Shown here in pieces: positions 17,178 through 63,205 of a stretch of 64,000 nucleotides of DNA. The notes below the pieces were generated by a model. It worked only from the letters and a program-made list of their open reading frames with translations, was not told where the DNA came from and made no database searches. Each line of letters begins with the position of its first letter. Within the stretch, counting starts at the first letter, position 1. Made by a program: the position numbers and the translations under genes. Location: positions 186,001 through 250,000 of IMG/VR virus record IMGVR_UViG_3300024262_006558. The stretch is one strand, 5' to 3'.

Positions 17178-17257
17178 GTTGATCCACTTTTTTAATAAAT
17201 AGTCTATTTTTTTAGTGTCTTTGACAACAAATTCCTTACATTAGCGTTAATAGCAAT

Positions 17258-45095: not shown

Positions 45096-45472
45096 AATGC
45101 GTTTCTTTTTGATTCGATAATATATACGTTGGAGGGGATATTGTGTACTAAATAAGAAAAACCCTTAGTATGGGAGTACTAAGGGTTTTATAGCGAAAAT
45201 GAAAACAAAACTTTAGAAGTGATATCTAATTATAATTTTGAAGAAATAAGTTAATCAAGTATCTACGAAGTTTTATCATTTCATTTATATATACACTAAC
45301 GAAGTAATTTTAAATTTGTTGCCACATATGAAACATTTATATTTCTCTTAGTAATTCCGCACCTTCGTATACCATGATATTCAATACACTATAGGGTTGG
45401 AGCTTGTATCCTGGAAAGTACATAATGTCCCCGTGGTCGTATATATTGTTGAATCAAAAAAACATACATATT

Positions 45473-45853
45473 ATGAAAGCTCACATGGAAATCGCAAATA
45501 CAATTTTATCACAGTTAAAAACTGGACAACAAAGCAAAATTAGAATGATGCGTTGGGGTGCAACTGGTTTTATGGGAATGAAGAAAGAAGGCAAGCTTGG
45601 CACGCTTAGATTTAAAGTGAACGGTTTGAAGTTCAAAGGATTTGTTTATATCTCTTTGAATGGCTCAGATACTTACGACATTGAATTTGTGAAAGTTAAG
45701 AGACGTAAAGATGAAGAGCTTAGCAAATTATACGGAAGAACTAAGTTTGAAGAGTACACTGAAACGGTGAAAGAGATGAACGGTATCTATTGCGACCAAA
45801 TGAATGAGTTGATAGATGAATATGTAGAGAAACAAAGTAACTATGCGTTTTAG
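45473..45853 (+). CDS. Hypothetical phage protein
   Basis: ATG after repeat A; IANTILSQL..FKVNG..SDTYDIEF..IYCDQM. Confidence 0.65.
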   Translation: MKAHMEIANTILSQLKTGQQSKIRMMRWGATGFMGMKKEGKLGTLRFKVNGLKFKGFVYISLNGSDTYDIEFVKVKRRKDEELSKLYGRTKFEEYTETVKEMNGIYCDQMNELIDEYVEKQSNYAF

Positions 45854-45905
45854 TACATAGTTTCCCCTTGGGGGTATATATTATTGAATTTTAAAAGAAG
45901 ATATT

Positions 45906-46124
45906 ATGTCACTTATAAAAAATGCAAAGTATAAAGATAACACCACTTACAAGTATGGGACACTTACTTATACGGGTAAAAAGAAAGATATTAATTATGG
46001 CATGGGTTCTTTTGAAATGTCTCATTGTTTTGATTACGTAGATAACAACTTCCCAAAAGAGTTTGGAGTAACAAAGAAATGGCTTACAGAATCTTATATT
46101 AAAAATCATTTAACAGCTCTTTAG
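45906..46124 (+). CDS. Hypothetical protein
   Basis: Behind repeat A. Confidence 0.6.
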   Translation: MSLIKNAKYKDNTTYKYGTLTYTGKKKDINYGMGSFEMSHCFDYVDNNFPKEFGVTKKWLTESYIKNHLTAL

Positions 46125-46289
46125 TTAGAGCTGTTTTTTTATTTGTGTATCTCTGAATTTTTCCGCAACTGCGTAAACCTTATCAGATACAGAGGGAGAG
46201 ATTGAGGTCACAAAAGCTGAAAAGTAAACTTTCCTATAAGTACATAGTTTCCCCCTCGTGGTATATATTGGTGAATCAAATTTAAAGAC

Positions 46290-46529
46290 ATGAAAACCAT
46301 TAAAGATTATAAAGTAGATTTTAAAGTAGCCAATAGTGATTATGGAACTTTAACTATACCAAAAGGAACAAGTGTGACAAATCAAACAGCAATGGGAATT
46401 GATAAAAACTATCATTTTGTTAATGATTTTTCATGGGTGAAAAAACATGAATGCGGTACTATACAACATGGCTTATTGCATGATTTAAAACACTATGGAA
46501 TTAATGTCCCAAAAGAATATGTGTCTTAG
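46290..46529 (+). CDS. Hypothetical protein
   Basis: Behind repeat A; stop overlaps the next copy. Confidence 0.6.
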   Translation: MKTIKDYKVDFKVANSDYGTLTIPKGTSVTNQTAMGIDKNYHFVNDFSWVKKHECGTIQHGLLHDLKHYGINVPKEYVS

Positions 46530-46797
46530 TACATAGTTTCCCCCTCGTGGTATATATTGGTGAATCAAATTTAAAGACATGAATCAATTACTTAGTACTC
46601 CGAACAAAAGCAAACAAGCATCAAAGGTTTTACAGTTGATGGATAGAGATTATAGTTATGAAGAATCTTTAGCAATCATATTGAATGCTGACAAAAGGCT
46701 TAGTAAGTCGAAGTTAGAAACTGAATTAAATCTTTACATATAAAGTACACAGTTTCCCCTTGGGGGTATATATTGGTGAATCAAAACAAAAAAAGTT

Positions 46798-47130
46798 ATG
46801 TGTTATTATTCAGATGAATTAAAAAGAATTAGTACAAAGTCAGAATTTCCAGCTCAAGTAAAATTATCTGATGCGGAAGGGAATAAGACAAAATTCTTAA
46901 GTCTCAATAAAGAGAGTGCAAAGGTTTTAGTTGAGTGGTTAACTACTAACTTTTTAGAAGCACCCGCAACTTTAAACGAAGTTATTGAAGGTGGTAAAAT
47001 GGTTGCCGAATATGAAACGCAGGATTTTGATGATACAGAAATGTATTTAGTAGAAGTCTATCATTTTGAGGATTCTCTTTATTATATCGCAAATGGCGCA
47101 ATAATCAGAAGAGGCCCTATAAAGAAATAA
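46798..47130 (+). CDS. Hypothetical protein
   Basis: Behind repeat A. Confidence 0.6.
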   Translation: MCYYSDELKRISTKSEFPAQVKLSDAEGNKTKFLSLNKESAKVLVEWLTTNFLEAPATLNEVIEGGKMVAEYETQDFDDTEMYLVEVYHFEDSLYYIANGAIIRRGPIKK

Positions 47131-47519
47131 AGTACACAGTTTCCCCTTGGGGGTATATATTATCGAATCAAAAAAACATTAAGATTATGAAGACTAATAA
47201 AAGACAAGAGAGAAGAGACGTTTCAGAAAAGAAAAAAGAAACATTCAATCAAAGTGCTAAAAAAGGGATGACTCCTTACAAGAGCAGAAAGCCTAAGCAC
47301 AAGAATGAAGATTTATTTGCTCATCTTGATGCTGTCTTAAAATACTAAAAGTACCATAGCGATAGTTCAAATAAAGAGGTTTCTAACCTCTTTTTTTTGT
47401 TTACTTGCTTCTCTGGTTTTTTCCGCACATTCGTAAACCTTGATGTCCCCCTATGCTGTTTGACCAAAAGTACATAGTTTCCCCGTCACCGTATATATTA
47501 GCGAATCAAAACAAACATT

Positions 47520-48419
47520 ATGAAAACGGCTGATATTTACCAAAAAGTTACAGATAGAATTTTAGACCTAATAGATAATGGCGGTAAATTGCCATGGGAA
47601 AAGCCATGGGACTATAATGGTCAGCTACCTTGTAACTATGCAAGTAAGAAGCCTTACAGAGGTATTAATTTAATTATGACTGCATTCGATGAATTTAATA
47701 GTCCTTTTTACTTAACTGCAAATGAGATCAAAAAGCGTAAAGGCTCTTGGAGCGGTAAGGGTACTTTAATAGTATTTTGGAAGTTCTTAAAATTCAAAGA
47801 CAAAGATGATGAAAACAAGTTAAAGACTGTACCAATGTTAAAACATTACTATGTTTGGAATGAAGAACAAATAACGGGTATAGAGTTCAAGCATAACGAT
47901 AAGCATGAAATAAAAGATTTCGGCACAATCAATGAAGTAGAAGACATTTTTGCAAATATGCCTAATAAGCCTTCTATCATTCATGAAGAACAAGACAGAG
48001 CTTGTTATTCTCCAATTGCTGATACTGTAATGATGCCTTTAAAAGGTCAGTTCAAATGTTTAGAGTCTTATTACAAAACATTTGCGCATGAATTAATTCA
48101 TTCTACTGGTCATGAAGACAGATTAAATAGAGATGGTGTTGCAAACTTTGACAAATTCGGTTCACATCAATATTCTAAAGAAGAACTAGTTGCTGAAATG
48201 GGTGCATCTTTTATTATGGGTATGGCTGGATTAGAGTCAACTCAAGAAAATTCAGCATCTTATATTAAAAGCTGGAGAAACAAAATAGCTGGAGATAATA
48301 AGTTAATTATTCAAGCTGCTGGACAGGCTCAAAAAGCGGTGGACTATGTTTTGGGAACTTACAAGGATTACGCTGAAATTGAGAAGGAAAACGATAATTC
48401 AAAAGCAATGGCGGTTTAA
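47520..48419 (+). CDS. ardC: ArdC-like antirestriction ssDNA-binding protein with zincin domain
   Basis: IYQKVTDRI..PWEKPW..YRGIN; AHELIHSTGH..RLNR; YSKEELVAEMGA; NSASYIKSW; AAGQAQKAVDY. Confidence 0.85.
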   Translation: MKTADIYQKVTDRILDLIDNGGKLPWEKPWDYNGQLPCNYASKKPYRGINLIMTAFDEFNSPFYLTANEIKKRKGSWSGKGTLIVFWKFLKFKDKDDENKLKTVPMLKHYYVWNEEQITGIEFKHNDKHEIKDFGTINEVEDIFANMPNKPSIIHEEQDRACYSPIADTVMMPLKGQFKCLESYYKTFAHELIHSTGHEDRLNRDGVANFDKFGSHQYSKEELVAEMGASFIMGMAGLESTQENSASYIKSWRNKIAGDNKLIIQAAGQAQKAVDYVLGTYKDYAEIEKENDNSKAMAV

Positions 48420-48573
48420 TAAAAAGGGTGGATTATTTTCCACCTTTTTTATTGGGGAGAGTTCTCTGAAAAATTCCGCATTATCGTAAACCTTAACCTC
48501 GTAATACATACCAATAACAAAGTACATAATATCCCCTTCGCCGTATATATTGATGAATCTAAACAAAATCATC

Positions 48574-48894
48574 ATGAAAATAGAGTTAATAAACAAAAAA
48601 CAGCATAAAGTTCTAAAAGACATTCAATCTAATCACCCATTGTTAACATTTCAAAATGTAGGTTACGAATACATTAACAAAGACAAATTAAGCAATGATG
48701 ATTTAGAGGCTTTAGAAGTGATAAAAGGTATTTTAAAATCGCACGTTTGCGGTTTCTCAAAATTCTTCAATTTCAAAATAGATAGTGATAATGATATAGT
48801 TATGCGATTTGATTATAATTATGGTTATGATGGTGGTCAATACTTCATTGGGGTTGGATATCTAAAGTTAGATGAATTACTAAAGGGGTTTTAG
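48574..48894 (+). CDS. Hypothetical protein
   Basis: Behind repeat A. Confidence 0.6.
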   Translation: MKIELINKKQHKVLKDIQSNHPLLTFQNVGYEYINKDKLSNDDLEALEVIKGILKSHVCGFSKFFNFKIDSDNDIVMRFDYNYGYDGGQYFIGVGYLKLDELLKGF

Positions 48895-48971
48895 AAATAA
48901 GGTACATAATATCCCCCTCACCGTATATATTAGTGAATCAAAAGTTAAACAAAACCAAAACAAATACAATT

Positions 48972-49226
48972 ATGAAAAAGACTTATGCAATCATCGCAAT
49001 TTATCTATTAGCTGGTCTTGCAGGACACGCAGGAAACAGCACTGAGGTTACTGAGTTTATGACTCAAACGGTTAACGTCAACGGTCATGGGGTGAACAGT
49101 TCACTTCAAATGTGGCAAAGCTTATTAGCATTAGCTACACCCGTTATCCTCATAGGAGGTGCAACGCTAATCGGTTACGTAAAGTATCGTAATGCAGAAG
49201 CAAAAAAAGCTACACAATTAGGTTGA
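48972..49226 (+). CDS. Small membrane protein
   Basis: Signal/TM segment plus a second TM; behind repeat A. Confidence 0.6.
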   Translation: MKKTYAIIAIYLLAGLAGHAGNSTEVTEFMTQTVNVNGHGVNSSLQMWQSLLALATPVILIGGATLIGYVKYRNAEAKKATQLG

Positions 49227-49519
49227 AACCCTTCGGGGTTTTCACATTCAGACAAGGAAGGCGAATATGGCTGAATGCGTTAAGTCCGCGAAGTACGGCT
49301 AAGTATAACATAAGAAAAGAAATAAACTTAATTGAAAGCATAAAAAACCCATCTATTAAATTAGATGGGTTTTTTATTAGGGAGAGTTCTCTAAGTATTT
49401 CCGCAATATCGTAAACCTTAATCTCATGATACATATCCAGAAAAGCTGAAAAGTAAACTTTCCTATAAGTACATAGTTTCCCCATTACCGTATATATTGG
49501 TGAATCAGAATTTAAAGAG

Positions 49520-49996
49520 ATGAAAAAGATAGCATTAGTAGACGTATTCAATGGAGAGGGATATTCAGACCCTACGGTCAAAGTAGTAGAAGATTGTAGT
49601 CAAGAAATGTTTGACTCAATAGAGGAAATGCGTACTTCTTATGGGGGAGATGACTTCGAGCAAGTGGAGGGAGAGTTAGAAGATTATTCTGATACCGTTC
49701 ACATGGCTTTTAATGGGATAGGTCATTCAGAAGATGATAACGGAGCAATTCATGTTATTGAAATTCCTAAAGGGAGAGTTTTACTTTTGTTATTGCAACC
49801 GTGTGAATGTGAGGTTAAAGTTTTTGGAACGTATGATTCAAAAGAAGAAGCTGAAATTGCTATGAAAGAAGAGGTTTATAAGGATTCAAACGGATATGAT
49901 TCTGATGAAGTAGAAGAATGGGAAGAAGAAGAAATTACTGATAGCTTTTCAGCACATGGAAAAGATAGTTTTGATTTTTATAAAATCATTAGTTAG
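49520..49996 (+). CDS. Acidic hypothetical protein
   Basis: Very D/E-rich; behind repeat A. Confidence 0.65.
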   Translation: MKKIALVDVFNGEGYSDPTVKVVEDCSQEMFDSIEEMRTSYGGDDFEQVEGELEDYSDTVHMAFNGIGHSEDDNGAIHVIEIPKGRVLLLLLQPCECEVKVFGTYDSKEEAEIAMKEEVYKDSNGYDSDEVEEWEEEEITDSFSAHGKDSFDFYKIIS

Positions 49997-50046
49997 TACA
50001 TAGTTTCCCCATCACCGTATATATTGTTGAATCAAAAATTAAGAAC

Positions 50047-50289
50047 ATGGAATTATTAAATGCAAAAGAAATGGCAAATAAAGTAGTTATTGACGAAAGT
50101 TTTCTTAAAGAAATAACTAAAAAAATTAATGAAAACGCTAAAAGTGGACGAATAGCTATTAACTGCGGTTGGAGATGGTGTTCCGCACAAGCAAAGTCTC
50201 ACGCTATTAACGTTTTAAAAAGTAATGGATATGGTATTGGATTTAGTACAAATTGTCATGGTGTGGACAGGCTGATAGTGACTTGGTAA
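50047..50289 (+). CDS. Hypothetical protein
   Basis: Behind repeat A. Confidence 0.6.
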   Translation: MELLNAKEMANKVVIDESFLKEITKKINENAKSGRIAINCGWRWCSAQAKSHAINVLKSNGYGIGFSTNCHGVDRLIVTW

Positions 50290-50427
50290 CAATATATAAC
50301 TTAAAAATAAAGATAACTCTATAGGGTTATCTTTATTTTAGTTATCGGTACATAATATCCCCATCACCGTATATATTGGTGAATCGGACAAACAGATAGT
50401 TTGCCAGTAAACGAAACAAAATCAGTT

Positions 50428-50739
50428 ATGAATAAGTCGGAAGAAAAGTTACACAATCAAGCGGTTAAGTATTTGGAATCTATAGGAGCAAAAGCTATAG
50501 ACAAAGAAGATATGCAAAGGTCGTATACTCACGCTTATGAATGTGCTATTGGAACTTTGTTTTTGAGAGTGGATACAGAGGGAACTATTTTCACTTTGTT
50601 TGGAAACTTTTTAAATGACATAGAAAAAGCAAAGAAAGAAATTGGGCATTGGAAACACAATTTACATATGTCAAAGAAATGTTTGAAATTAGTAGGATAT
50701 AAGAATGCTATTGATGAGCATTTAGAAATCGTGTCATAA
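50428..50739 (+). CDS. Hypothetical protein
   Basis: Behind repeat A. Confidence 0.6.
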   Translation: MNKSEEKLHNQAVKYLESIGAKAIDKEDMQRSYTHAYECAIGTLFLRVDTEGTIFTLFGNFLNDIEKAKKEIGHWKHNLHMSKKCLKLVGYKNAIDEHLEIVS

Positions 50740-50822
50740 GTACATAGTCTCCCCATCACCGTATATATTGTTGAATCGGACAAACAACAAGTTTGCCAGT
50801 AAACGAAAAACAAACAAACATT

Positions 50823-51035
50823 ATGAAAAGAGCATTATTTATCGCATTAAAAGAAAACGGTCAAGTTGTAGATTACGTTGATAGCGTAGGGGTAAAGAAC
50901 AGAACCGTTGAAGACCTTATCGAAATGATTGTTGCTAAAGGCGACAAAGTAACCAACATGGTTATTAACAAAGTAAAAACAGCTCCAAAGGAGACTTGGA
51001 ACAAATTGAAAGCGGGATTCGCTAGAGCAAACTAA
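50823..51035 (+). CDS. Hypothetical protein
   Basis: Behind repeat A. Confidence 0.6.
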   Translation: MKRALFIALKENGQVVDYVDSVGVKNRTVEDLIEMIVAKGDKVTNMVINKVKTAPKETWNKLKAGFARAN

Positions 51036-51212
51036 TTGTTTGATTCAAAGATTCGGGGACTTGTTCCCCTTTCTTTTTGTTTGTGCATCTCTGAGTTTTT
51101 CCGCATCTTCGTAAACCTAATCTTTTGTTAACCAGATCCAGGAAAGCTGATCTTTCCCATAAGTACATAATATCCCCATGGTCGTATATATTACCGAATC
51201 AAAAGTAAAAAC

Positions 51213-51545
51213 ATGAACTATTCAAAAAACAATCGTTTAATAGCAGAATTTATGCAAGCGCCATTTTATTCTCCAAATGATTTTGATTTATATAGCACTA
51301 GCGGTTTAAATCATATCTTTAGAGATGTTGAAAGTGATGATGCTAATGCTCAACACTTCTTTAGAGGTGAACAAATGTTATTTCATAATTCATGGGACTG
51401 GTTAATTCCTGTAATACAAAAAATTAAAGAGATTGATTCTTCTATTGGTATAGAGCAAAGGCTTAATCCTTTTACTTACAACTTAGATTCTGTTTATGCT
51501 GGAGTTATTGAGTTCATTAAATCTTATAACCATAAAAGTACATAA
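51213..51545 (+). CDS. Hypothetical phage protein
   Basis: NNRLIAEFM..FHNSWDWLIPVIQKI; the stop is supplied by the next repeat A. Confidence 0.65.
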   Translation: MNYSKNNRLIAEFMQAPFYSPNDFDLYSTSGLNHIFRDVESDDANAQHFFRGEQMLFHNSWDWLIPVIQKIKEIDSSIGIEQRLNPFTYNLDSVYAGVIEFIKSYNHKST

Positions 51546-51590
51546 TTTCCCCCGTACCGTATATATTGGTGAATTTAAACAAAGCATATT

Positions 51591-52163
51591 ATGAAAACTA
51601 TTGAACTATCAAATAATCGAGTATTAAAGATTGAGCAAGATACAGATTTAGAAAGTCCACGTAATTGGGATAACTTAGCTAAAATGATTTTCTTTGGCAA
51701 GTATTCTCATTTAGGAGATAGTCACGAGATTAACAGTAGAGACTATGAAAGTTTTGAAGAAGTTGAAGCTGCAATCAAAAGAAAGTATAATGTAGCTTGC
51801 ATTAAAAAAATATATGGTTATTCGCATGGTGGATTAACAATAGCAACAACGCCTTTCTCTTGCTCTTGGGATAGTGGAGTTTTAGGATTTGCTATTATCA
51901 CAAAAGAAGACCTTAGAGAAAATTACTCTATCAAAAGAGTAACAAAACAATATGTTAAAAAAGGAAATGGGCATATTGAAGGTGAAGTAAAAACATTAGA
52001 TCAATTCATTAGCGGTGACGTTTACGGCTTCACGCTAGAGAAAGAGGGCGAATATGAAGATTCATGTTGGGGGTTCTATGGGGACAACGTATTAGAAAAT
52101 GGTATGCTTGACCACATAACCGAAGAAGTAAGTGAAGAAATTAAAAAAGCCTTAGCGGCTTAA
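51591..52163 (+). CDS. Hypothetical phage protein
   Basis: SPRNWDNL, YSHGG, WDSG, DSCWGFYG. Confidence 0.65.
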   Translation: MKTIELSNNRVLKIEQDTDLESPRNWDNLAKMIFFGKYSHLGDSHEINSRDYESFEEVEAAIKRKYNVACIKKIYGYSHGGLTIATTPFSCSWDSGVLGFAIITKEDLRENYSIKRVTKQYVKKGNGHIEGEVKTLDQFISGDVYGFTLEKEGEYEDSCWGFYGDNVLENGMLDHITEEVSEEIKKALAA

Positions 52164-52371
52164 AAAGAATTGTGTTTGATTCAAGAACTAAGGGGCGAAA
52201 GTCCCTTTTTTCTTTTTCTTGTTTCTCTGAGTTTTTCCGCATTTTCGTATACCTAGGTTTTAAATTCAAGTTTCCATTTTGGCAACAAAAAGCAAAAAAT
52301 TTCGTTATAGTAAAAGTACATAGTTTCCCCACCACCGTATATATTGGTGAATCAAAAAACAAATAGAAGTT

Positions 52372-52920
52372 ATGAAAAATGAAGTTAAAAGAATATCGCA
52401 AGAACAATTTATCGCACTTATCAACGGTAGTTCAGATGTAACAATCAACGGTAACACGTTTATCAACATCGAAACAATGACCGCAGTAAGTGATCTTGTT
52501 AAGCCAAAAAGCAATCCTTTTAACGGTGCAATGAAAATGAACATATCAAATGTTCAAATCTTTCAAAACAAAAACGGTTCATCTTATGAAGCGAAAGTTA
52601 AAAGAGAGATGGCGAAAGAGGGTAAAGATCCAGAGTCTTTCGAGTTACAGCCTAGAACGTGGGGCGAAAGAATCAAAAACACTCCATTAGTAATGCACAA
52701 AGGAGAATTTTACTTGGAAGTTATGTTTAACTCACAAGTGGGAGCAACAAAATTCTTCCACGAAGGAAAAGAAATTTCAGCCGAAACTTTAAAGCCTCAT
52801 AGAAGAATAAAGGTAGAAGGTAAGCAAGGAGGATTAGAAAACAAAGTAATCATTAGAACTTACAAAGTAGCTTCTATTCAATCAATCACTATCGCAAAAC
52901 AAAAGTATGTGATAATGTAA
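52372..52920 (+). CDS. Hypothetical protein
   Basis: Behind repeats B, C and A; terminator follows. Confidence 0.65.
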   Translation: MKNEVKRISQEQFIALINGSSDVTINGNTFINIETMTAVSDLVKPKSNPFNGAMKMNISNVQIFQNKNGSSYEAKVKREMAKEGKDPESFELQPRTWGERIKNTPLVMHKGEFYLEVMFNSQVGATKFFHEGKEISAETLKPHRRIKVEGKQGGLENKVIIRTYKVASIQSITIAKQKYVIM

Positions 52921-53069
52921 AAACAAAAAAGGAACTTTAATTAGTTCCTTTTTTTTGCTTGTTGTTTCTCTGAATTTTTCCGCAACTGCGTAAACCTAGT
53001 CCACTCCATAGGGAGAGGTGCAGATCACCATTAGTACATAATCTCCCCACCACCGTATATATTGTCGAG

Positions 53070-53333
53070 ATGAAAAGAAAACTATTCAAATACAAGTATA
53101 CTCGAAGAACTTTCTCTAAGGATGGAAGTTTTTGCACGGAGGAACATACTAGGGAGAGCGACTTTAGCTTAAAAGCTTTTGAGGGAGAGGTTGCTGACTG
53201 GCATCGACAAGGGCAAATGATGAAGCACAGAGACACTCTAAGCGAGATTCAAGGCTATGACTACTTCATCACTAAGGAGCAGGGAGAGTTTAACGAGAGA
53301 GCCTATAAAGTTAGAGTACTAGTAAGTACATAG
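53070..53333 (+). CDS. Hypothetical protein
   Basis: ATG directly after repeat A; stop lies inside the next copy. Confidence 0.55.
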   Translation: MKRKLFKYKYTRRTFSKDGSFCTEEHTRESDFSLKAFEGEVADWHRQGQMMKHRDTLSEIQGYDYFITKEQGEFNERAYKVRVLVST

Positions 53334-53377
53334 TCTCCCCATGGTCGTATATATTGGTGAATCTAAATAAAGGAATC

Positions 53378-53545
53378 ATGTATCAAAAACAATATGCAGA
53401 TAGAAGATTGGAATCTTTGATTAAAAGTCACATAGGAGCATCTGACTCTTATATAGAAGCGGTTGCTTGGGCTAGTTTTAGCGGAACTCATAGTATTACT
53501 GAAATAGCAAATGAGGTAGCTAGATTAAAAAAATGTCATTCATGA
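53378..53545 (+). CDS. Hypothetical protein
   Basis: Behind repeat A. Confidence 0.5.
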   Translation: MYQKQYADRRLESLIKSHIGASDSYIEAVAWASFSGTHSITEIANEVARLKKCHS

Positions 53546-53868
53546 AAAACATTATAATCATAGGAGCTGTAAGCGTTAGTCAATCAGTCCATATAATGAA
53601 TGTATTGGCTGGTATGGATACGGATATTTCTATTGTCGTAAACGCTAAAGGCGGCATGATGCAAAACTTCATGGATATGGAGAGAGGAACGAGTCTTTCA
53701 TCTCTTAAGTTTGATGTCACAAAAGATTATTGTTTAGAAGATATTCCCGAATTTGAATATGAAAAGATTGGAGACCGTAAACAGTTAACCTCAAAGCAGC
53801 GTAAAAATAGAAAAGCTAAAAGAAGGCAAGTAAAGCAGTCAAGGAATTTTATGCACAAAAGTACATAG
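53533..53868 (+). CDS. Hypothetical protein with basic C-terminus
   Basis: Stop lies inside the next repeat A. Confidence 0.55.
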   Translation: MSFMKNIIIIGAVSVSQSVHIMNVLAGMDTDISIVVNAKGGMMQNFMDMERGTSLSSLKFDVTKDYCLEDIPEFEYEKIGDRKQLTSKQRKNRKAKRRQVKQSRNFMHKST

Positions 53869-53914
53869 TCTCCCCATCACCGTATATATTAGTGAATCGA
53901 AAAACAAGACACAA

Positions 53915-54259
53915 ATGGAAAGTTCAGCATCTTATACGCATTTACCTTTAGCATCATTAGAAAGCTTATTACAAACGGCTTTAAAATCAGAGAATTATAA
54001 GAAGGCTCACCATGTGCAAAAAGCAATGGAGCATAACTTACTACATTCAACTATATCTTTCACTAAGAATGGAGATATGATATTGACTCCCGCATTTGAA
54101 GAGGTTGTTGAGTACTGGTTGAATGGTAAGGTTATTTTAAGAGAAAGCGTTGATGGGTCAAGTGTTGAATCCGTTGGATTAACTAGAGGGTTATTAGCTT
54201 TTGAGAATGAAGTTAGAGAAACTGAAATTAGTATCAACGTAAACATGAGGAGGGTATAA
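53915..54259 (+). CDS. Hypothetical protein with UVR-like motif
   Basis: LQTALKSENYKKAHHVQ. Confidence 0.55.
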   Translation: MESSASYTHLPLASLESLLQTALKSENYKKAHHVQKAMEHNLLHSTISFTKNGDMILTPAFEEVVEYWLNGKVILRESVDGSSVESVGLTRGLLAFENEVRETEISINVNMRRV

Positions 54260-54261
54260 TT

Positions 54262-54729
54262 ATGAATCATTTATCATTAGCAACAGTAGCAGCAATCATA
54301 TCGGATACAATCATAAAAAAGTTGTATAAGCACGTTCAGAAAAACATTGGAGAAGGTTATATCTATACGGTTGACCTTATTGGTCAATGGGCGGTGGAGT
54401 TTGAAACTAAGTATGGAGAGGTAGATTGGGAGGATTTCCAAATGAATCCTACTAAGTACGGATTTGATGAAAGTCATTGTGCATGGGATGATGCGGTTAT
54501 GTCATTCGCTAAAAAGAAATTTAAAGAGTTAAAGGGAGAGGTTGAGAAAGAGGTAAATGAGTTTACCCCTGTTCCCAAAGAAGAAAGAAGCTTAACGCAT
54601 TGTGTATGTCCTAAATGCGACAAGAAACATGAGTACACAAAGTACGCTTTGGCTCAAATGGCTTCGGGCGTTCATTTAAAGAAGGCTTGTGATTGTGGAA
54701 AGAATATTGTAATAGCACCATTTAAGTAG
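54262..54729 (+). CDS. Hypothetical protein with C-terminal zinc ribbon
   Basis: CPKC...CDCG. Confidence 0.6.
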   Translation: MNHLSLATVAAIISDTIIKKLYKHVQKNIGEGYIYTVDLIGQWAVEFETKYGEVDWEDFQMNPTKYGFDESHCAWDDAVMSFAKKKFKELKGEVEKEVNEFTPVPKEERSLTHCVCPKCDKKHEYTKYALAQMASGVHLKKACDCGKNIVIAPFK

Positions 54730-54959
54730 GGAGAGTTATGGAAAGATTAGGCTACTATGCAAAAGATGTTGAAGACAATTTGTTTCAATTCAAATGGGGA
54801 GAGGATGATAAATTCTATATCTTCAAGAATCAAAAGTATCATTTAGATAATCCTAATAACTATGTGATATTAGAGGTAGGTTTCTTTACGGCTGATAATC
54901 CAAGTACATAATATCCCCATCACCGTATATATTGTTGAATCAAAAAACAAACAAACATT

Positions 54960-55355
54960 ATGGAAAAGCATTTAGTAACAATTGAGTTCAGATATTCAAG
55001 TGCTCCCGATAAATTCGATTCTACTAGTCAAGACAAAGTAGTGACAATAGGGGTTTATGACGATTTTGATGAAGCTTGTAAAGAGGGAAACAAAGCCCTT
55101 GAATTACTTGAGAGTAAATTTGACATTCATACTTTCCCTCAAGGAAATAAGGCTAAAAAAGAAAGATTTAGTAAAAATGGCGGTTGCTTTGGAAGTAAGA
55201 ACACCTTAGTTTCAAACTTGGCTTATTTGAAAACACCATTTCAGTTTTTTGCAAAGATAGAAACATTAAAGCTTGATTCGTTAGAGGATGCAGTTAATGA
55301 AGTAGTTGATTCTGTAAAAGGATATAGAAAATATAAAGCCTCAATTGAGGATTAG
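54960..55355 (+). CDS. Hypothetical protein
   Basis: Behind repeat A. Confidence 0.6.
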   Translation: MEKHLVTIEFRYSSAPDKFDSTSQDKVVTIGVYDDFDEACKEGNKALELLESKFDIHTFPQGNKAKKERFSKNGGCFGSKNTLVSNLAYLKTPFQFFAKIETLKLDSLEDAVNEVVDSVKGYRKYKASIED

Positions 55356-55407
55356 TACATAGTTTCCCCATCACCGTATATATTTTTGAATAGAAACAAA
55401 AGCAATC

Positions 55408-55599
55408 ATGAAAAAGCAATTTAGAAAAACTTGGAGACACGAAGTAATTATTGAAGCTGAAACAAAAGAAGAAGCACAACAGATGTGGGAAAGTATTTCA
55501 CTTGGTAAACTTGACAAAGAAGTAGCTGATGGAGAAATATATTCACACGAATTTGTGGAGAACGTTTCTTTTGAAGATGAAAACTACGATGATGTATAA
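55408..55599 (+). CDS. Hypothetical protein
   Basis: Behind repeat A; followed by the first attC-like site. Confidence 0.6.
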   Translation: MKKQFRKTWRHEVIIEAETKEEAQQMWESISLGKLDKEVADGEIYSHEFVENVSFEDENYDDV

Positions 55600-55710
55600 T
55601 GGCATACAACGGCTTGGATATGCACCGTAAAGCGTAGCACAATGTTTAATCTTAACACTTCACTATCACGCTTAATGGTGTATAGGTTGTGTTAGCAAAT
55701 CGTTTTAATT

Positions 55711-55956
55711 ATGGAATTTAGGGAAGAAACAATACAAGAATTTAACTCATACAGAGATACAACATTAACAGAAGATATGACTTTTGCAGACGCAGTTGAA
55801 AATATTGAAAATGCAAATAATAGTTATTTTTATATTTCACTTAGTCAAAATGATGTTATTGAAGCTATTAATGATGAAAAAGAAATAGCAGAGCAGTTTG
55901 ATTTAGATTTAGTTTACTTGTTACCTCAAGGAATAGCTATTGCATTACAGGTGTAA
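55711..55956 (+). CDS. Cassette-borne acidic hypothetical protein
   Basis: Between GTTAGCAAA and TTTGCTAAC. Confidence 0.6.
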   Translation: MEFREETIQEFNSYRDTTLTEDMTFADAVENIENANNSYFYISLSQNDVIEAINDEKEIAEQFDLDLVYLLPQGIAIALQV

Positions 55957-56047
55957 TGTTTGCTAACGTTTAGTGTATGGTGTCGTTTGAGGCACGAAAA
56001 TGCACTATACATATTGTTGTGTGTAGTGCGGAATTTAAAAACTAAAC

Positions 56048-56236
56048 TTGATTAAAATGAAATACAAAAGTAAAACCACAAATAATATTGTAACCGTTAT
56101 TGAAAAAATAGGTGCTGGAATGTGTAGTAAAACATTAGGTATGACTTTAGTTATATTTAAGTTTGAAGACGATTTAGACTTTCATAGAGTAATGGAACAT
56201 AGAGAGTTCTATGCTAAATACGAAGAGGTAGAGTAG
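56048..56236 (+). CDS. Cassette-borne hypothetical protein
   Basis: Between GTTGTGTGTAGTGC and GCATTACACACAAC. Confidence 0.55.
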   Translation: MIKMKYKSKTTNNIVTVIEKIGAGMCSKTLGMTLVIFKFEDDLDFHRVMEHREFYAKYEEVE

Positions 56237-56336
56237 CATTACACACAACGTTTTGGCTATGTGCTGAACGTAGAGCAACGGAGTTTTGCATATAGGTAGT
56301 GTTATATGCTTTTATTAACAATTAAAATTAAACAAG

Positions 56337-56915
56337 ATGAAAATATTATTTCAAAGAGAAAGTGAAAACCTTAACTGTATTGTTTCTTGTAAAGACAATT
56401 CAAGAATAGAGACACCAAATGAGAGTAAGAGTTTATTGAATGAGAATGATTTATATGAAATTGCAAAATGGGGATTAGAAGGTGAATATTCATCGAGTGG
56501 GTGTTGGGATGATACTGATAATCTTGAAGATGCTATAAAATGTGCTGTTGAAGATTTTAAACTGTTTTTATCAAAACCATATCCGATTGAATTGGGTAAC
56601 ATACCAAATAATCCAATAATATATAGATTAGTTAGATTAAAAAACATAAATGACCTAAGAAAAAACGAATTAGGTAATAGTTGGTTTTCAAATCCAAACC
56701 AAATCCACGAAGAAGGGTTTTTTCAGATGTTAGATTATTTAAAACCGTTTAAAAATAAAGATGGTCAAGTTTATATAATCAAAGGACAGATAAATAAAGA
56801 CAATATTGATATGAAAAGAACTTTATGGGAACGAAGCACACAGTGGTGGGAAAACGAAATAGTGGTAATTGATGATTCCAACATAAAAATAATTTCAATC
56901 GAAGCACTATCTTAG
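56337..56915 (+). CDS. Cassette-borne hypothetical protein
   Basis: 192 aa between attC-like sites with non-matching ends. Confidence 0.6.
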   Translation: MKILFQRESENLNCIVSCKDNSRIETPNESKSLLNENDLYEIAKWGLEGEYSSSGCWDDTDNLEDAIKCAVEDFKLFLSKPYPIELGNIPNNPIIYRLVRLKNINDLRKNELGNSWFSNPNQIHEEGFFQMLDYLKPFKNKDGQVYIIKGQINKDNIDMKRTLWERSTQWWENEIVVIDDSNIKIISIEALS

Positions 56916-57061
56916 TATTGGTGCTAACGTTTAGTATAAGATTAGTTGCGATTAATAGCACTCACCTACGCAAACTACAACAGTTGATTAAAAGTAAAAT
57001 GATTAAATAACCAAACAACGTAGCAATTAATTTTATACGTTGTTATAAATCTGTAAAAATT

Positions 57062-57244
57062 ATGGAATGGATAGTAGTACCAAAGATTGGATTTAAACAT
57101 AAAATTGGTAACATGATATGTGGATTATTAAAAGTGATTGATGGATTGATTATGGTAATTTCATTCGGAAATTTAGCAACCAATTTTTGTTTAAATTTTA
57201 CAATAGTTAGAAAAAGGCACAACTTTATGTTAGACAATAAATAA
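57062..57244 (+). CDS. Cassette-borne hypothetical protein
   Basis: Between GTTATAAA and TTTATAAC. Confidence 0.55.
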   Translation: MEWIVVPKIGFKHKIGNMICGLLKVIDGLIMVISFGNLATNFCLNFTIVRKRHNFMLDNK

Positions 57245-57441
57245 TTTTTATTGTTTATAACACGAAAATAAAGATAAGCGTTAAGCGACCCGAAGGGTTA
57301 TCTTTTATTTTCTGTTATGATCTGATAGTCCAAGTACATAGTCTCCCCATCACCGTATATATTGGTGATGGGGAAACAGAAAAATGGTAATGGGTTATAC
57401 ATTGTGTTATAGCCTTTTAATTAACAATTAAATAAACAAAA

Positions 57442-57639
57442 ATGAAAGATTTAGATTTAACAAAAGACCAACACTTAATGAGTATTAGAGTTGATGGGGA
57501 ATGTATAGGACACGTTGAAATAGAGGATGGTAAAATAATTACAAATGGCACAGTAGGAGAAAACACTTACGAGAATTTTGTAGACTTAATATACGGACTA
57601 CAAGGGTTTGGGATAAGTGTAGATGACTTCTTCTTTTAA
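57442..57639 (+). CDS. Cassette-borne hypothetical protein
   Basis: Between GTTATAGCC and GGCTATAAC. Confidence 0.6.
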   Translation: MKDLDLTKDQHLMSIRVDGECIGHVEIEDGKIITNGTVGENTYENFVDLIYGLQGFGISVDDFFF

Positions 57640-57764
57640 TTGGCTATAACGGTTAGTATATGAGCCTGTACTTGTATGGCTTATATACATTGTTGTATGC
57701 TGGTGCGGTTTTGAAGCACTAATTTTCAAATAATAACTAAAGTAATAATTAAATATTTTGAGCG

Positions 57765-58130
57765 ATGGAAAAACAAAAAAATCAAACAAGTGCAATAAAT
57801 GCACAAGTTGGTGTAAAAAATGCACATACTGAACTAATCGGAAATTCCGAACAGTTGAACTTTACAAAAGGCGAATGGAAAGCCGAAAGAAAATCAGAAA
57901 ACCAAACTTGCCACTTAGTAAAAACAGGCGCTAAATACACTATTCACGTGTACGACTCTAAATATGGGATAGAAGAGTCTGAAAGTTGGCAAAATGCTAA
58001 ATTAATAGCAAAAGCACCTAATTTGCTGGAAATGCTAAAAAAAGTAACTGATGAATTAGAATTTTACGCAGGGAATGAAATTATAAAACACCCACTTATA
58101 AATGAATCAAGAAATTTAATGAAATTATGA
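57765..58130 (+). CDS. Cassette-borne hypothetical phage protein
   Basis: FTKGEW...NAKLIAKAPNLLEML; between GTTGTATGC and GCATACAAC. Confidence 0.6.
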   Translation: MEKQKNQTSAINAQVGVKNAHTELIGNSEQLNFTKGEWKAERKSENQTCHLVKTGAKYTIHVYDSKYGIEESESWQNAKLIAKAPNLLEMLKKVTDELEFYAGNEIIKHPLINESRNLMKL

Positions 58131-58805
58131 AAAACTTTATAACAAAAGCAAATGAGTTGAAAGTTAGTTATTCAACACTATACAAACTAATTTTAGGAAA
58201 AGAAATTGAGTGTATATTAGTTTGTGGTAGGTATTATTTTAATTAAGAGCGAGGGCAAAAATATTTAATTATGGTATTAGAAGCACTAAACTTGAATATT
58301 AGCACTAATGTAGCACTTGCATACAACACGAAAATAAAGATAAGCGTTAAGCGACCCGAAGGGTTATCTTTTATTTTCTGTTATGATCTGATAGTCCAAG
58401 TACATAGTCTCCCCATCACCGTATATATTGGTGATGGGGAAACAGAAAAATGGTAAAGCGTTATATGGATTGTATCTATATAACTAACGTGGGGAAATAA
58501 ATAGACGACTGATTTGAGTACTTGAAAAAGTTTAAAAGATTCCTAAGATGTTGGAATATCATAAAAAACTCTGTTAACTGTTGGGCAGTCGAGCCAATTG
58601 CGTCTATAACGTAGTATTGTTGAATACAATCTGTCCCAATTACCTAGGAAGTCTGATTAATTTCAGGCTTTCTTTTTTTATATTTGTTTCTCTGACTTTT
58701 TCCGCAACTGCGTAAACCGATCGATTATATTCCCTGGAGGAACCAATCAACAAAGTACATAATATCCCCATCACCGTATATATTGGTGAATCTAAACTTA
58801 AAGAC

Positions 58806-59228
58806 ATGAAAGACTTATTTGAACATTACGAAGAAATGCCTAGCCACCTTACCGCTATTTGCGATAAGTGGACAGAGAAGCATTTGGATGAAGGTTTAAG
58901 TTACATTGACTGTGCAGACTTCCTAAAAGAATTGGAAGCGATTGGATATACTTTCGAGTATGGTTTGGATGCAGAGCCGTATGGATTAGTTGAAATTTCT
59001 AAAAAGAAAGTATTTGTTTACTTGGCAAAACTTGGAGTTGTGGTAAGTACAGATGAAAATGGAGAAACGGAGGTTCAAAGAATTGACAGTCCCGAAGAGT
59101 TTAGAGATGACAACGAATTGTTTTTGGATTTCACTCCTCCATTATTGGAGAGCGACCAAGAAGCAAAAGACATTTATAATAGCATCACGCATTCAATGTG
59201 GATTCATTTAACTGGAGACAAAACGTAA
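58806..59228 (+). CDS. Hypothetical protein
   Basis: Behind repeat A. Confidence 0.6.
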   Translation: MKDLFEHYEEMPSHLTAICDKWTEKHLDEGLSYIDCADFLKELEAIGYTFEYGLDAEPYGLVEISKKKVFVYLAKLGVVVSTDENGETEVQRIDSPEEFRDDNELFLDFTPPLLESDQEAKDIYNSITHSMWIHLTGDKT

Positions 59229-59283
59229 AAGTACATAATATCCCCGCCACCGTATATATTGGTGAATCTAAACAAAGGAAATT

Positions 59284-59781
59284 ATGAAAACTATAAAAGT
59301 AAGACACTACAACGGAACGGAATTACAAGTTAGTCTTGGAGATGTTATAATAGGCGAAGGTACTATGGGAACATCAAAAGGTAGAGATGTAACTGGGGTA
59401 GTTCACAAAATAGAAGTAGGTAACATCACGTTGAAAAGAGGTAACACTTTACACTTGGTAGACCACACGACTTTAAAAGTTGCTCAAATGAGAGAAAACA
59501 ACTTTGAAGTGTATACTAAGAATCCGAAAACGGGTGAAGAAGGTTGGGAAATTGAAATGGTATCGGTAATAGCATATAGTACATATCACGCTAGGCAGAT
59601 ATTGAAGAAGTGGAATTTGTTTGACGAAGTTATCTTGTTTAATTTCTCTGCTCCACTCGCAGAATCTAACGAAGCAGGATTGTACACTTTAAATGAAACG
59701 ATGAAAGCAGTAGAAGGTACAATTCTTGAAACGGATTACCACAACAAATATTATAAACCATTAGCACACATTAAAGCATAA
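59284..59781 (+). CDS. Hypothetical protein
   Basis: Behind repeat A. Confidence 0.6.
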   Translation: MKTIKVRHYNGTELQVSLGDVIIGEGTMGTSKGRDVTGVVHKIEVGNITLKRGNTLHLVDHTTLKVAQMRENNFEVYTKNPKTGEEGWEIEMVSVIAYSTYHARQILKKWNLFDEVILFNFSAPLAESNEAGLYTLNETMKAVEGTILETDYHNKYYKPLAHIKA

Positions 59782-59955
59782 GTGTTTGATTCAGAAATTT
59801 AGAGGGCGAGAGTCCTCTATTTTTCGTTATTGATTTCTCTGAGTTTTTCCGCAGCTGCGTAAACCATACGATCGGAATCCCTGGAGGATCCGATCATGCA
59901 ACAAAGTACATAGTTTCCCCGTTAGTGTATATATTACTGAATCAAAAGAATTATA

Positions 59956-63080: not shown

Positions 63081-63205
63081 TATTCACCACAACACGAAAA
63101 TAAAGATAAGCGTTAAGCGACCCGATAGGGTTATCTTTTATTTTCTGTTATCGGTACATAATATCCCCCGTACCGTATATATTGGTGAACTTAAATAAAA
63201 ACATC

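What the first reader, a model, noticed from the sequence alone, without database searches (positions are those of the whole stretch)
45344..59865. Second repeat (B) shares a register-aligned core with repeat A and sits between terminators and A
Seen: 10 copies of TCTCT-N6-TTCCGCA-N4-CGTAWACC. Nine follow a terminator hairpin/T-run, and all lie 30-65 nt upstream of a repeat A copy. Aligned on CGTA, B (TTTCCGCA-N4-CGTAAA) and A (TTTCCCCA-N4-CGTATA) share the same core in the same register but differ in the flanking boxes. Inference: either a paralogous promoter for a second specificity factor, or an operator/activator site marking the first promoter of each transcription unit.
Basis: partly seen in the sequence, partly recalled or inferred. 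Interest (0 to 1): 0.62.

Follow-up and report, generated by a model that had tools for sequence, protein, structure and literature searches.

The report
Second promoter-like box heading phage operons
A 30-base motif sits just after the terminator at the head of each operon in the orphan-gene block of an uncultivated 388-kb Bacteroidota-type phage; it is most likely a second class of phage promoter placed upstream of the main one, though a repressor or roadblock site is not excluded.

Summary
There are 10 exact copies of motif B in the window, none expected by chance, and 19 in the whole 388,594-bp phage record. All lie on the + strand inside one 44-kb block of small orphan genes, which also holds all 57 copies of repeat A. 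Nine of the 10 window copies follow a stable hairpin plus T-run, and each lies 28-61 nt upstream of an A copy.

New findings:
- B starts about 15-19 nt after the hairpin's G+C-rich core.
- The distance from B to the next A or B is never under 57 bp, piles up at 57-58, and shows no helical phasing.
- Relatives from other metagenomes keep B, including a lineage whose ECF sigma is only 48% identical. They keep the terminator-B-A order and a tandem B array (3-5 copies) in a syntenic non-coding region.
- The phage has no detectable RNA polymerase gene but three sigma genes, and at least four other promoter-like motif classes.

Best reading (about 0.5): B is a separate promoter class that heads each terminator-bounded unit. 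Main rival (about 0.3): an oriented site for a phage regulator, either a roadblock or an operator. No transcription start data exist. The A/B shared core is only marginally above chance (29 of 500 shuffles). This is a new variant of composite terminator/promoter cassettes, of moderate interest.

The parts
45344..45373 (+). B copy 1. It heads the first + strand unit of the block and is the only window copy without an upstream terminator.
46150..46179 (+). B copy 2
47410..47439 (+). B copy 3. It heads the ArdC-like gene unit.
48463..48492 (+). B copy 4
49388..49417 (+). B copy 5
51088..51117 (+). B copy 6. It is intact in a strain variant whose two SNPs fall just downstream, at 51121 and 51132.
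52224..52253 (+). B copy 7
52967..52996 (+). B copy 8. It heads a 5.7-kb unit with several internal A copies.
58689..58718 (+). B copy 9
59836..59865 (+). B copy 10
46112..46135 (+). Terminator hairpin before B2, followed by a T-run
   Evidence: z -4.0
47373..47393 (+). Terminator hairpin before B3
   Evidence: z -3.4
48415..48456 (+). Terminator hairpin before B4 (A-run/T-run extended stem)
   Evidence: z -5.8
49340..49377 (+). Terminator hairpin before B5
   Evidence: z -6.6
51055..51069 (+). Terminator hairpin before B6 (short G+C stem)
   Evidence: z -1.6
52190..52207 (+). Terminator hairpin before B7
   Evidence: z -2.8
52925..52954 (+). Terminator hairpin before B8
   Evidence: z -3.5
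58646..58673 (+). Terminator hairpin before B9
   Evidence: z -5.1
59800..59819 (+). Terminator hairpin before B10
   Evidence: z -4.9
45417..45447 (+). A copy downstream of B1
46239..46269 (+). A copy downstream of B2
47469..47499 (+). A copy downstream of B3
48521..48551 (+). A copy downstream of B4
49468..49498 (+). A copy downstream of B5
51162..51192 (+). A copy downstream of B6
52315..52345 (+). A copy downstream of B7
53033..53063 (+). A copy downstream of B8
58754..58784 (+). A copy downstream of B9
59905..59935 (+). A copy downstream of B10
29581..30444 (+). Phage RpoD-type sigma gene (sigma-2). It is one of three phage sigma genes and a candidate reader of the phage-specific promoter classes. 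No assignment to B has been made.

Best explanation
B is a second, phage-specific class of promoter. It is a three-block site: TCTC(T/G), then TTTCCGCA about one helical turn later, then CGTA(A/T)AC another turn later. Host RNA polymerase would read it with a different specificity factor from the one that reads A.

One B stands at the head of each terminator-bounded transcription unit of the 44-kb orphan-gene block, directly behind the previous unit's terminator. The terminator's T-rich tail then lies where an UP element would lie. A transcript started at B would run through the downstream A promoter and every gene of the unit up to the next terminator. One B per unit would therefore be enough to express the whole block under a second regime (another time or another factor), while the 57 A copies drive genes individually.

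Shown: the anatomy, copy numbers, orientation, spacing rules, conservation in relatives, the sigma gene content, and that no RNA polymerase catalytic subunit was detected. Inferred: that RNA polymerase binds B, where it would start (expected about 6-9 nt after CGTAWAC), and which factor reads it.
For: 1. All 19 copies in this genome, and every copy in the related contigs L114, L115, L194, L196 and L199, are co-oriented with the genes. All lie in intergenic DNA of one block.
2. All 10 terminator-bounded units in the window begin with B. About 12 of the strong + strand terminators in the block are followed by B. B also heads units that have no upstream terminator (genome 231344 and 265165), as a promoter would but a terminator accessory would not.
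3. B and A have the same layout. Their conserved blocks begin at the same position (22 nt before CGTA), share a middle block T-n-TCC-n-C, have a variable 4-5 nt at the same place, and then GTA. The best PWM offset is exactly this register.
4. The G+C-rich core of the hairpin ends about 15-19 nt before B in most terminator-linked copies, in both lineages, as read from the sequences. The scripted stems run on through the A/T runs and give smaller figures. A copies that directly follow terminators (genome 250810 and 258193) show the same 16-19 nt.
5. In-register distances from B to the next A (15 cases, 57-94 bp) or the next B (68, 58; relatives 57, 57, 58, 62) are never under 57 bp, and seven sit at 57-58. 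That is the size of an RNA polymerase-promoter complex and is larger than a typical regulator site needs.
6. B is retained with its invariant blocks in a lineage whose ECF sigma is only 48% identical, together with the terminator-B-A order.
7. The phage has three sigma genes and no detectable RNA polymerase catalytic subunit, so several promoter classes are expected.
8. The B-to-A spacers are not structured as RNA, and no Rfam family matches. This argues against an RNA element.
Against: - There are no transcription start data, and no RNA run holds this phage.
- B has no A+T-rich -10 box.
- Its -35 position reads TCTC(T/G), not the AAC typical of ECF promoters. A separate class, gCAACA-N16/17-CGTTa (26 of 54 matches intergenic against 3 of 39 for a reversed control), is the better match for the phage's only ECF sigma.
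- The two RpoD-type sigmas keep largely the same region 2.4 and 4.2 stretches as each other, so no factor can be assigned to B.
- The most conserved block, TTTCCGCA, would lie in the promoter spacer, which is unusual.
- One copy (genome 255920) lies 9 nt before a terminator, so a transcript started there would end at once.
- The A/B similarity is only marginal: 29 of 500 shuffles reach it.
- The 57-bp lower bound could partly reflect the size of the duplicated unit in the arrays.
Confidence: 0.5

Rival explanations
1. B is an oriented binding site for a phage-encoded regulator, not for polymerase. It would be either a polar roadblock or insulator placed a fixed distance beyond each intrinsic terminator to stop read-through into the next unit, or an operator used to silence the block late in infection. 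This would resemble the stoperators of cluster A mycobacteriophages.
For: - B is asymmetric, strictly oriented with transcription, and lies in short intergenic spaces at many dispersed sites. These are the properties described for stoperators (PMC9283540).
- Spacing to the terminator is tight, about 15-19 nt from the G+C-rich core of the stem, while spacing to A is loose.
- The three blocks lie about 11.5 bp apart, so on one face of the helix. The outer halves, TTTCCG and CGTAAA, form an imperfect inverted repeat with 5 of 6 positions complementary.
- Tandem arrays are typical of protein-binding sites.
- No sigma can be matched to B.
Against: - Two dispersed copies, and the array copies, have no terminator to assist.
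- Copy 1 (window 45344) sits where no + strand transcription arrives from upstream, because the genes just upstream are on the - strand.
- At least two strong terminators in the block lack B.
- A 57-bp minimum spacing is more than a small regulator needs.
- No candidate DNA-binding protein was identified.
- The phage looks lytic and T4-like rather than temperate.
Confidence: 0.3
2. B is an upstream activator site (enhancer-like) for the A-type or ECF-type promoter that follows it.
For: Every dispersed B is followed by an A. The array is followed by an ECF-type promoter whose -35 overlaps the 5' half of an A motif. That layout is conserved in L115.
Against: - 42 of 57 A copies work without B.
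- B-to-A distances of 57-94 bp show no 10.5-bp phasing.
- A sequences with and without B are the same.
Confidence: 0.07
3. B has no direct regulatory role. It would be a conserved homology box (or a decayed paralogue of A) that persists because it mediates cassette shuffling by recombination, as proposed for PeSL cassettes of T4-type phages.
For: - The block is orphan-rich: 9 of the 10 block proteins scanned have no Pfam family, though an ArdC-like gene is also there. Conserved boxes of about 30 and 40 bp flank the gene cassettes.
- PeSL elements are composite terminator/promoter repeats in such regions and recombine (PMC2839356, PMC4122927).
- Cassette subfamilies with shared spacers exist.
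Against: - Invariant blocks are kept across a lineage with only 48% sigma identity, while spacers and hairpin stems diverge freely. That points to sequence-specific selection.
- Recombination needs no fixed orientation or block structure.
- The PeSL boxes are themselves working promoters.
Confidence: 0.05
4. B is an iteron-type site of a replication or partition system. The tandem array in the conserved non-coding region would be the origin or centromere.
For: 3-5 tandem copies at 57-68 bp spacing lie in a 2.3-kb non-coding region that is syntenic between two lineages.
Against: - Fifteen further copies are dispersed at operon heads, which iterons are not.
- The array lies where the two transcription directions converge and at a local maximum of cumulative GC skew, not a minimum.
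- No initiator gene was found next to it.
Confidence: 0.05

Closest known systems
PeSL (promoter-early stem-loop) cassettes of T4-type phages (Arbiol et al. 2010, PMC2839356; Comeau et al. 2014, PMC4122927)
   Same: Both are composite intergenic repeats that join a terminator stem-loop and a promoter, with an A/T-rich stretch upstream of the promoter. Both occur in about 50 copies, concentrated in orphan-gene regions, in phages with T4-type structural genes.
   Different: PeSL promoters are sigma-70 consensus early promoters, with one promoter box per cassette. Here neither A nor B matches the host-type (Bacteroidota) consensus. The cassette carries two different conserved boxes in series, and B is present only at unit heads.
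Tandem early and middle promoters of phage T4, and the MotA box (Hinton 2010, PMC2988021)
   Same: Prereplicative genes are served by two promoter classes read by the same host core enzyme with different specificity. A phage-specific box replaces the -35 element.
   Different: T4 middle promoters keep an excellent sigma-70 -10 box, and B has none. No MotA or AsiA homologue was sought or found. This phage carries its own sigma factors.
Stoperators of cluster A mycobacteriophages (L5 repressor; PMC9283540)
   Same: Many dispersed, asymmetric sites in short intergenic spaces, whose orientation follows the direction of transcription.
   Different: Stoperators are 13-bp sites of an immunity repressor in temperate phages, and some overlap promoters as operators. 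B is 30 bp, lies beside terminators, never overlaps A, and no repressor is known.
ECF sigma promoters (AAC-N16-CGT type, such as SigW or RpoE; consensus given from my own knowledge)
   Same: B has an invariant CGTA where an ECF -10 would lie, and a conserved box 16 nt upstream. The phage encodes a SigW/RpoE-like sigma.
   Different: The -35 position reads TCTC(T/G), not AAC. A separate, canonical AAC-N16/17-CGTT class exists in the same genome.
Tandem strong early promoters A1-A3 of phage T7 (from my own knowledge)
   Same: Several copies of one promoter class in series at the edge of the early region.
   Different: The T7 promoters are host sigma-70 promoters that drive early genes. The B array points into a conserved non-coding region.

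Membership tests
Sigma-dependent bacterial promoter | Two conserved boxes about 16-18 bp apart, co-oriented with and upstream of the genes | tested here: met
   The TCTC(T/G) block and the CGTA(A/T)AC block are separated by 16-17 nt. All 19 copies are on the coding strand side and upstream of genes.
Sigma-dependent bacterial promoter | A transcription start a few nt downstream of the -10 box | not testable with these tools
   No RNA run holds this phage. Logan contigs cannot show 5' ends.
Sigma-dependent bacterial promoter | A cognate sigma factor whose known specificity fits the boxes | tested here: inconclusive
   There are three phage sigma genes. The ECF one fits the gCAACA-N16/17-CGTTa class better. 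The two RpoD-type sigmas keep largely the same region 2.4 and 4.2 stretches as each other.
PeSL cassettes of T4-type phages | Composite stem-loop terminator plus promoter repeat in intergenic DNA of orphan-rich regions | tested here: met
   Terminator, then B, then A, upstream of orphan genes. The portal is T4-like.
PeSL cassettes of T4-type phages | The promoter part matches the host primary-sigma consensus | tested here: not met
   Neither B nor A contains TTG-N-TAnnTTTG. Such host-type sites occur elsewhere in the genome.
PeSL cassettes of T4-type phages | Recombination between copies creates indels and mini-circles | tested here: inconclusive
   The joints between copies in Logan contigs are what repeats produce in assembly graphs. 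No independent evidence was found.
Stoperator / oriented repressor site | Asymmetric site whose orientation follows transcription, in short intergenic spaces, at many dispersed copies | tested here: met
   definition from PMC9283540
Stoperator / oriented repressor site | A phage repressor that binds the site, with some sites overlapping promoters as operators | tested here: not met
   No B overlaps an A: the minimum in-register distance is 57 bp. No repressor was identified, and binding is not testable here.
ECF-type promoter | -35 with AAC and -10 with CGT, 16-17 nt apart | tested here: not met
   CGT is invariant, but the -35 position is TCTC(T/G). The canonical class is found separately.
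Origin iterons | Direct repeats clustered at one locus beside an initiator gene | tested here: inconclusive
   An array of 3 copies plus 1 exists at genome 274108-274586, and 4 plus 1 in L115. However, 15 copies are dispersed, and no initiator gene was recognised.

The most novel reading that the evidence does not exclude
The terminator and B form one machine. A factor or polymerase-docking site is held a fixed distance (B starts about 15-19 bp past the G+C-rich core of the hairpin) beyond each intrinsic terminator. It either completes termination as a polar roadblock or recaptures the polymerase just released and restarts it, so each unit boundary would be an insulator and re-initiation point in one. 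The tandem array at the convergent end of the block would act as a final barrier or a strong re-entry point.
Probability: 0.15. Interest if true: 0.7.

Novelty: new variant of a known kind. Interest (0 to 1): 0.45.

Why it matters
Huge phages without their own RNA polymerase must reprogramme the host enzyme, and for Bacteroidota-infecting phages almost nothing is known about how. This genome offers a readable wiring diagram:
- three phage sigma genes;
- host-type promoters;
- an ECF-type class;
- a late-like class;
- a 44-kb orphan-gene block in which every gene has promoter A and every terminator-bounded unit in the window is headed by B.

If B is a second promoter class, the block is a clean example of two-tier control (operon level and gene level) built from modular cassettes, and it provides ready-made orthogonal parts for Bacteroidota genetics. 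If B is instead a roadblock coupled to terminators, it would be a new kind of bacterial insulator.

Both readings can be tested with short synthetic fragments and three recombinant sigma factors, without culturing the phage.

Tried and rejected
- Near-identity search of 8 kb of the block against GenBank phages: no match.
- IMG/VR scans for the B core, for A, and for a relaxed B pattern. A gave no hit. The B scans gave only single chance or coding-sequence hits.
- GTDB genome scan for B: 14 single hits in unrelated taxa, about the chance number. B is therefore not a common host regulatory site, and the lineage is not in those genomes.
- The search for related loci with the ECF sigma in IMG/VR: nothing.
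- Metagenome array scan: besides true relatives it returned 18-bp satellite repeats (L197, L201, L202) and two unrelated tandem look-alikes. L195 is a bacterial contig (MntP, DUF1385). L198 has no informative ORFs. All were set aside.
- RNA evidence: no RNA run holds the phage.
- Rfam: nothing in window 43000-64000 at gathering score, and nothing in the array region at E <= 1.
- The B-to-A spacers as a structured RNA: 9 of 10 have z-scores near zero or positive, so rejected.
- B as the target of the ECF sigma: disfavoured after the canonical AAC-N16/17-CGTT class was found.
- A as a host-type -7 box promoter: rejected, because the last two positions of the box vary within and between lineages.
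- Phage-encoded RNA polymerase: Rpb1 domain 2 not found. The T7-type model also found nothing, but its control was silent, so that result is uninformative. Large unannotated proteins have no Pfam or PHROG match.
- Reaching the rest of the 494-kb source contig through a locus handle: not held.
No alternative genetic code was used.


Full report
**Context.** The window is bases 186,001-250,000 of a 388,594-bp IMG/VR virus record. The source contig, Ga0210003_1000004, is 494,080 bp. G+C is about 33%.

The genome encodes a T4-type portal interrupted by an intein, a split DNA polymerase III alpha with an intein, ribonucleotide reductase, thymidylate synthase and NAD salvage genes. By portal similarity its nearest cultured relatives are Microcystis phage Mel-JY01 and Flavobacterium phage immuto. 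A 484-kb uncultured phage also matches.

Only 7-8% of genes have a Shine-Dalgarno-like sequence, and positions -11 to -13 are A-rich. TTG-N-TAnnTTTG sites lie just upstream of many genes. From my own knowledge these are the hallmarks of Bacteroidota translation and primary-sigma promoters, so a Bacteroidota host is inferred, not shown.

No RNA polymerase large-subunit domain was found. The T7-type model search was uninformative. Three sigma genes are present:
- two RpoD-type genes of 285-287 aa, 37% identical to each other and largely the same in regions 2.4 and 4.2 (sigma-1 at genome 9.6-10.4 kb; sigma-2 at window 29581-30444);
- one SigW/RpoE-like ECF sigma of 192 aa (sigma-3, genome 267937-268515).

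**The observation.** Shuffled sequence gave none. In the whole genome the motif occurs 19 times, all on the + strand, between genome 231,344 and 274,586.

Repeat A occurs 57 times between 230,298 and 273,546. Fifty-five copies are on the + strand and two on the - strand, at the left, divergent edge. Both motifs are thus confined to one 44-kb block of about 95 small genes. Nine of the 10 block proteins scanned have no Pfam family. An ArdC-like anti-restriction gene is an exception.

Nine of the 10 window copies follow a stable hairpin plus T-run, and the first does not. The gap from B to the next A is 28-61 nt.

**Anatomy of B.** Aligned on CGTA, the 19 copies show three conserved blocks. They are TCTC(T/G), TTTCCGCA and CGTA(A/T)AC, with centres about 11.5 bp apart. 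The four bases between the last two blocks are variable, and there is little conservation downstream. No partial forms exist elsewhere in the genome.

A has its 5' edge at the same position, a middle block T-n-TCCCC, a variable 5 nt, then GTATATATT and a conserved leader, TGAATCAAA.

A PWM comparison puts the best A/B offset exactly in this register, with a score of 8.5 against 3.5 for the next best. But 29 of 500 column shuffles do as well. The shared register is therefore real as a description and only suggestive as evidence of common recognition.

**Position rules.**
- In the window all 10 terminator-bounded units begin with B.
- Across the block about 12 strong + strand terminators are followed by B. 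At least two strong terminators (before the A copies at genome 250810 and 258193), and four copies of a different long-hairpin repeat, are followed directly by A. In one case (genome 255920) B lies 9 nt before the terminator.
- B at 231344 and 265165 has no terminator upstream.
- The G+C-rich core of the hairpin ends about 15-19 nt before B in most terminator-linked copies, both here and in the relatives. I read this from the printed sequences, because the scripted stems run on through the A/T runs. The two A copies that follow terminators directly show the same 16-19 nt.
- In-register distances from B to the next A are 57, 58, 58, 64, 65, 66, 68, 72, 73, 79, 83, 87, 88, 90 and 94 bp. From B to the next B they are 68 and 58 bp here, and 57, 57, 58 and 62 bp in relatives. 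There is no 10.5-bp phasing, a hard lower limit at 57, and a pile-up at that limit.
- The spacers do not fold and match no Rfam family.

**Relatives.** The ECF sigma has close homologues on short metagenome contigs, at 71%, 60% and 48% identity.
- L114 (a TARA ocean sample; sigma 71% identical, neighbouring protein 91%) has the same B-A pair in front of the same gene. B is 28 of 30 identical, and a 16-nt indel lies in the spacer.
- L115 (sigma 48% identical) has five B copies, four of them in tandem, in a non-coding region syntenic with genome 273.9-276.2 kb of this phage. That region here holds one B plus three in tandem. In both phages the array is followed by the same hybrid promoter-like site.
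- Contigs L194, L196 and L199, from the same samples as L115, show whole terminator-B-A-gene units. There B reads TCTCG...TTTCCGCA-N4-CGTAAAC and A reads GTATACATT instead of GTATATATT. Each motif has thus drifted at one or two positions in a concerted way while its blocks stayed intact.
- A strain variant in a 2025 run leaves B6 untouched and carries two SNPs just downstream of it.

**Other promoter classes.** Four further classes put B in context:
- Host-type TTG-N-TAnnTTTG sites, one of them in front of the sigma-1 operon.
- A canonical ECF-type class, gCAACA-N16/17-CGTTa, with 26 of 54 matches intergenic against 3 of 39 for a reversed control. These lie 8-40 nt from gene starts all over the genome. 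It is the natural target of sigma-3, and it includes the site that follows the B array.
- A shared motif, TTG..CTAwwTTGGAAAC, in front of both sigma-2 and sigma-3.
- A late-like enriched word, CTATTTATA, outside the block.

B fits none of these classes.

**Interpretation.** Several features together are what a promoter class heading operons would show, and I give this about 0.5:
- strict co-orientation with the genes;
- position at unit heads, including heads with no terminator;
- the same architecture and terminator spacing as the bona fide promoter A;
- a polymerase-sized exclusion distance to the next site;
- tandem arrays;
- retention across a diverged lineage;
- a phage that must work through sigma factors.

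The T-rich terminator tail would then fall at about -35 to -52, overlapping the -40 to -60 range where UP elements lie (PMC2988021). PeSL cassettes of T4-type phages are the closest precedent (PMC2839356, PMC4122927).

Against this reading there is no A+T-rich -10, no AAC at -35, no assignable sigma, and a strongly conserved middle block in what would be the spacer. One copy would fire straight into a terminator, and no start-site data exist.

The main rival, at about 0.3, is an oriented regulator site of the stoperator kind (PMC9283540), or a roadblock that works with the terminator. It explains the tight coupling to the hairpin. It does not explain the copies without terminators or the 57-bp rule.

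An activator site for A (0.07), a pure recombination box (0.05) and iterons (0.05) fit less well.

**Limits.** Gene calls are from a crude longest-ORF script. The sigma-to-motif assignments are inference. The consensus sequences of SigW-type and Bacteroidota promoters are cited from my own knowledge. Only two diverged lineages were available, and those only as short contigs.

Noticed in passing
Genome-wide. In the window near 17225, 18008, 21100, 33837, 45298 (- strand), 52283, 59899 and 63090.: A canonical ECF-type promoter class, gCAACA-N16/17-CGTTa. 26 of 54 matches are intergenic, against 3 of 39 for a reversed control, and most intergenic sites lie 8-40 nt upstream of gene starts. It is the likely regulon of the phage's SigW/RpoE-like sigma (genome 267937-268515).
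   Followed up: partly
Window 29581-30444 (+); genome 9583-10437 (-); genome 267937-268515 (+): Three phage sigma genes: two RpoD-type, 37% identical to each other, and one ECF. No RNA polymerase catalytic subunit was detected. Sigma-2 and sigma-3 share an upstream motif, TTG..CTAwwTTGGAAAC, that is also present in relative L115.
   Followed up: partly
For example window 36795 (-) and 69706 (+, beyond the window); many sites at genome 294-347 kb: Host-type TTG-N-TAnnTTTG promoters end only 3-5 nt before the ATG of several genes. This suggests leaderless or near-leaderless mRNAs.
   Followed up: no
L019:3870-6180 (genome 273,870-276,180), just beyond the window: A 2.3-kb non-coding region where the + and - strand gene blocks converge, syntenic with L115. 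It holds the B array, an A/ECF hybrid site, a conserved GTTTCCA-N3-TGGAAAC hairpin, a conserved TTTTTCGTTGGTTGAAAAACC element and a bidirectional terminator. Its function is unknown; it could be a non-coding RNA, a packaging site or an origin.
   Followed up: partly
Window about 50300-50345, 57250-57330, 58320-58395 and 63090-63150; also genome about 86,600: A separate repeat that forms a long A/T-rich hairpin around GACCCGAAGGGTT, followed by TCTTTTATTTT. It stands directly upstream of A copies in place of a terminator plus B.
   Followed up: no
L018:14572-14992, - strand (genome 264,572-264,992): Three tandem elements of about 100 nt with sub-threshold Rfam tRNA matches (19.7-21.7 bits; gathering score 29) that ARAGORN does not call. 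They have T-arm-like GTTCGAATC motifs. They may be degenerate or intron-bearing tRNAs, and they lie inside the orphan-gene block just upstream of a B copy.
   Followed up: partly
Window 46214-46238 and 49443-49467, a variant at 51140-51161, and others beyond the window: A third conserved box, AGCTGAAAAGTAAACTTTCCTATA, abuts a subset of A copies on the 5' side, with or without B. It is absent from the orthologous cassette of L114 (16-nt indel).
   Followed up: no
Window 51040, 52176 and 59786: TGTTTGATTCA, the reverse complement of the conserved A leader TGAATCAAA, lies just before three of the terminators that precede B. There are only three cases, probably one cassette subfamily.
   Followed up: partly
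Window 14434-16683 (-): A 749-aa fusion protein with a nucleotidyltransferase domain, DUF5661, and a 2H-phosphoesterase/Acb1-like (anti-CBASS) domain. NAPRTase and NAD synthase genes are nearby at 21645-23162 and 24933-26747, so NAD+ rebuilding as a counter-defence is possible.
   Followed up: no
Genome 52,456-56,097 (-), 45,705-51,765 (-), 171,175-174,132 (+): Inteins or homing endonucleases interrupt the T4-type portal (intein plus HNH), the DNA polymerase III alpha gene (Hint/intein at a split) and an SNF2 helicase (LAGLIDADG).
   Followed up: no
Whole record: IMG/VR labels the 388,594-bp record a provirus cut from a 494,080-bp contig. The remaining about 105 kb could not be read here, so the true genome size, the ends and any host flank are unknown. 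Outside the block an enriched upstream word, CTATTTATA (24 upstream regions against 2.4 expected for CTATTTA), looks like a late-promoter class.
   Followed up: partly
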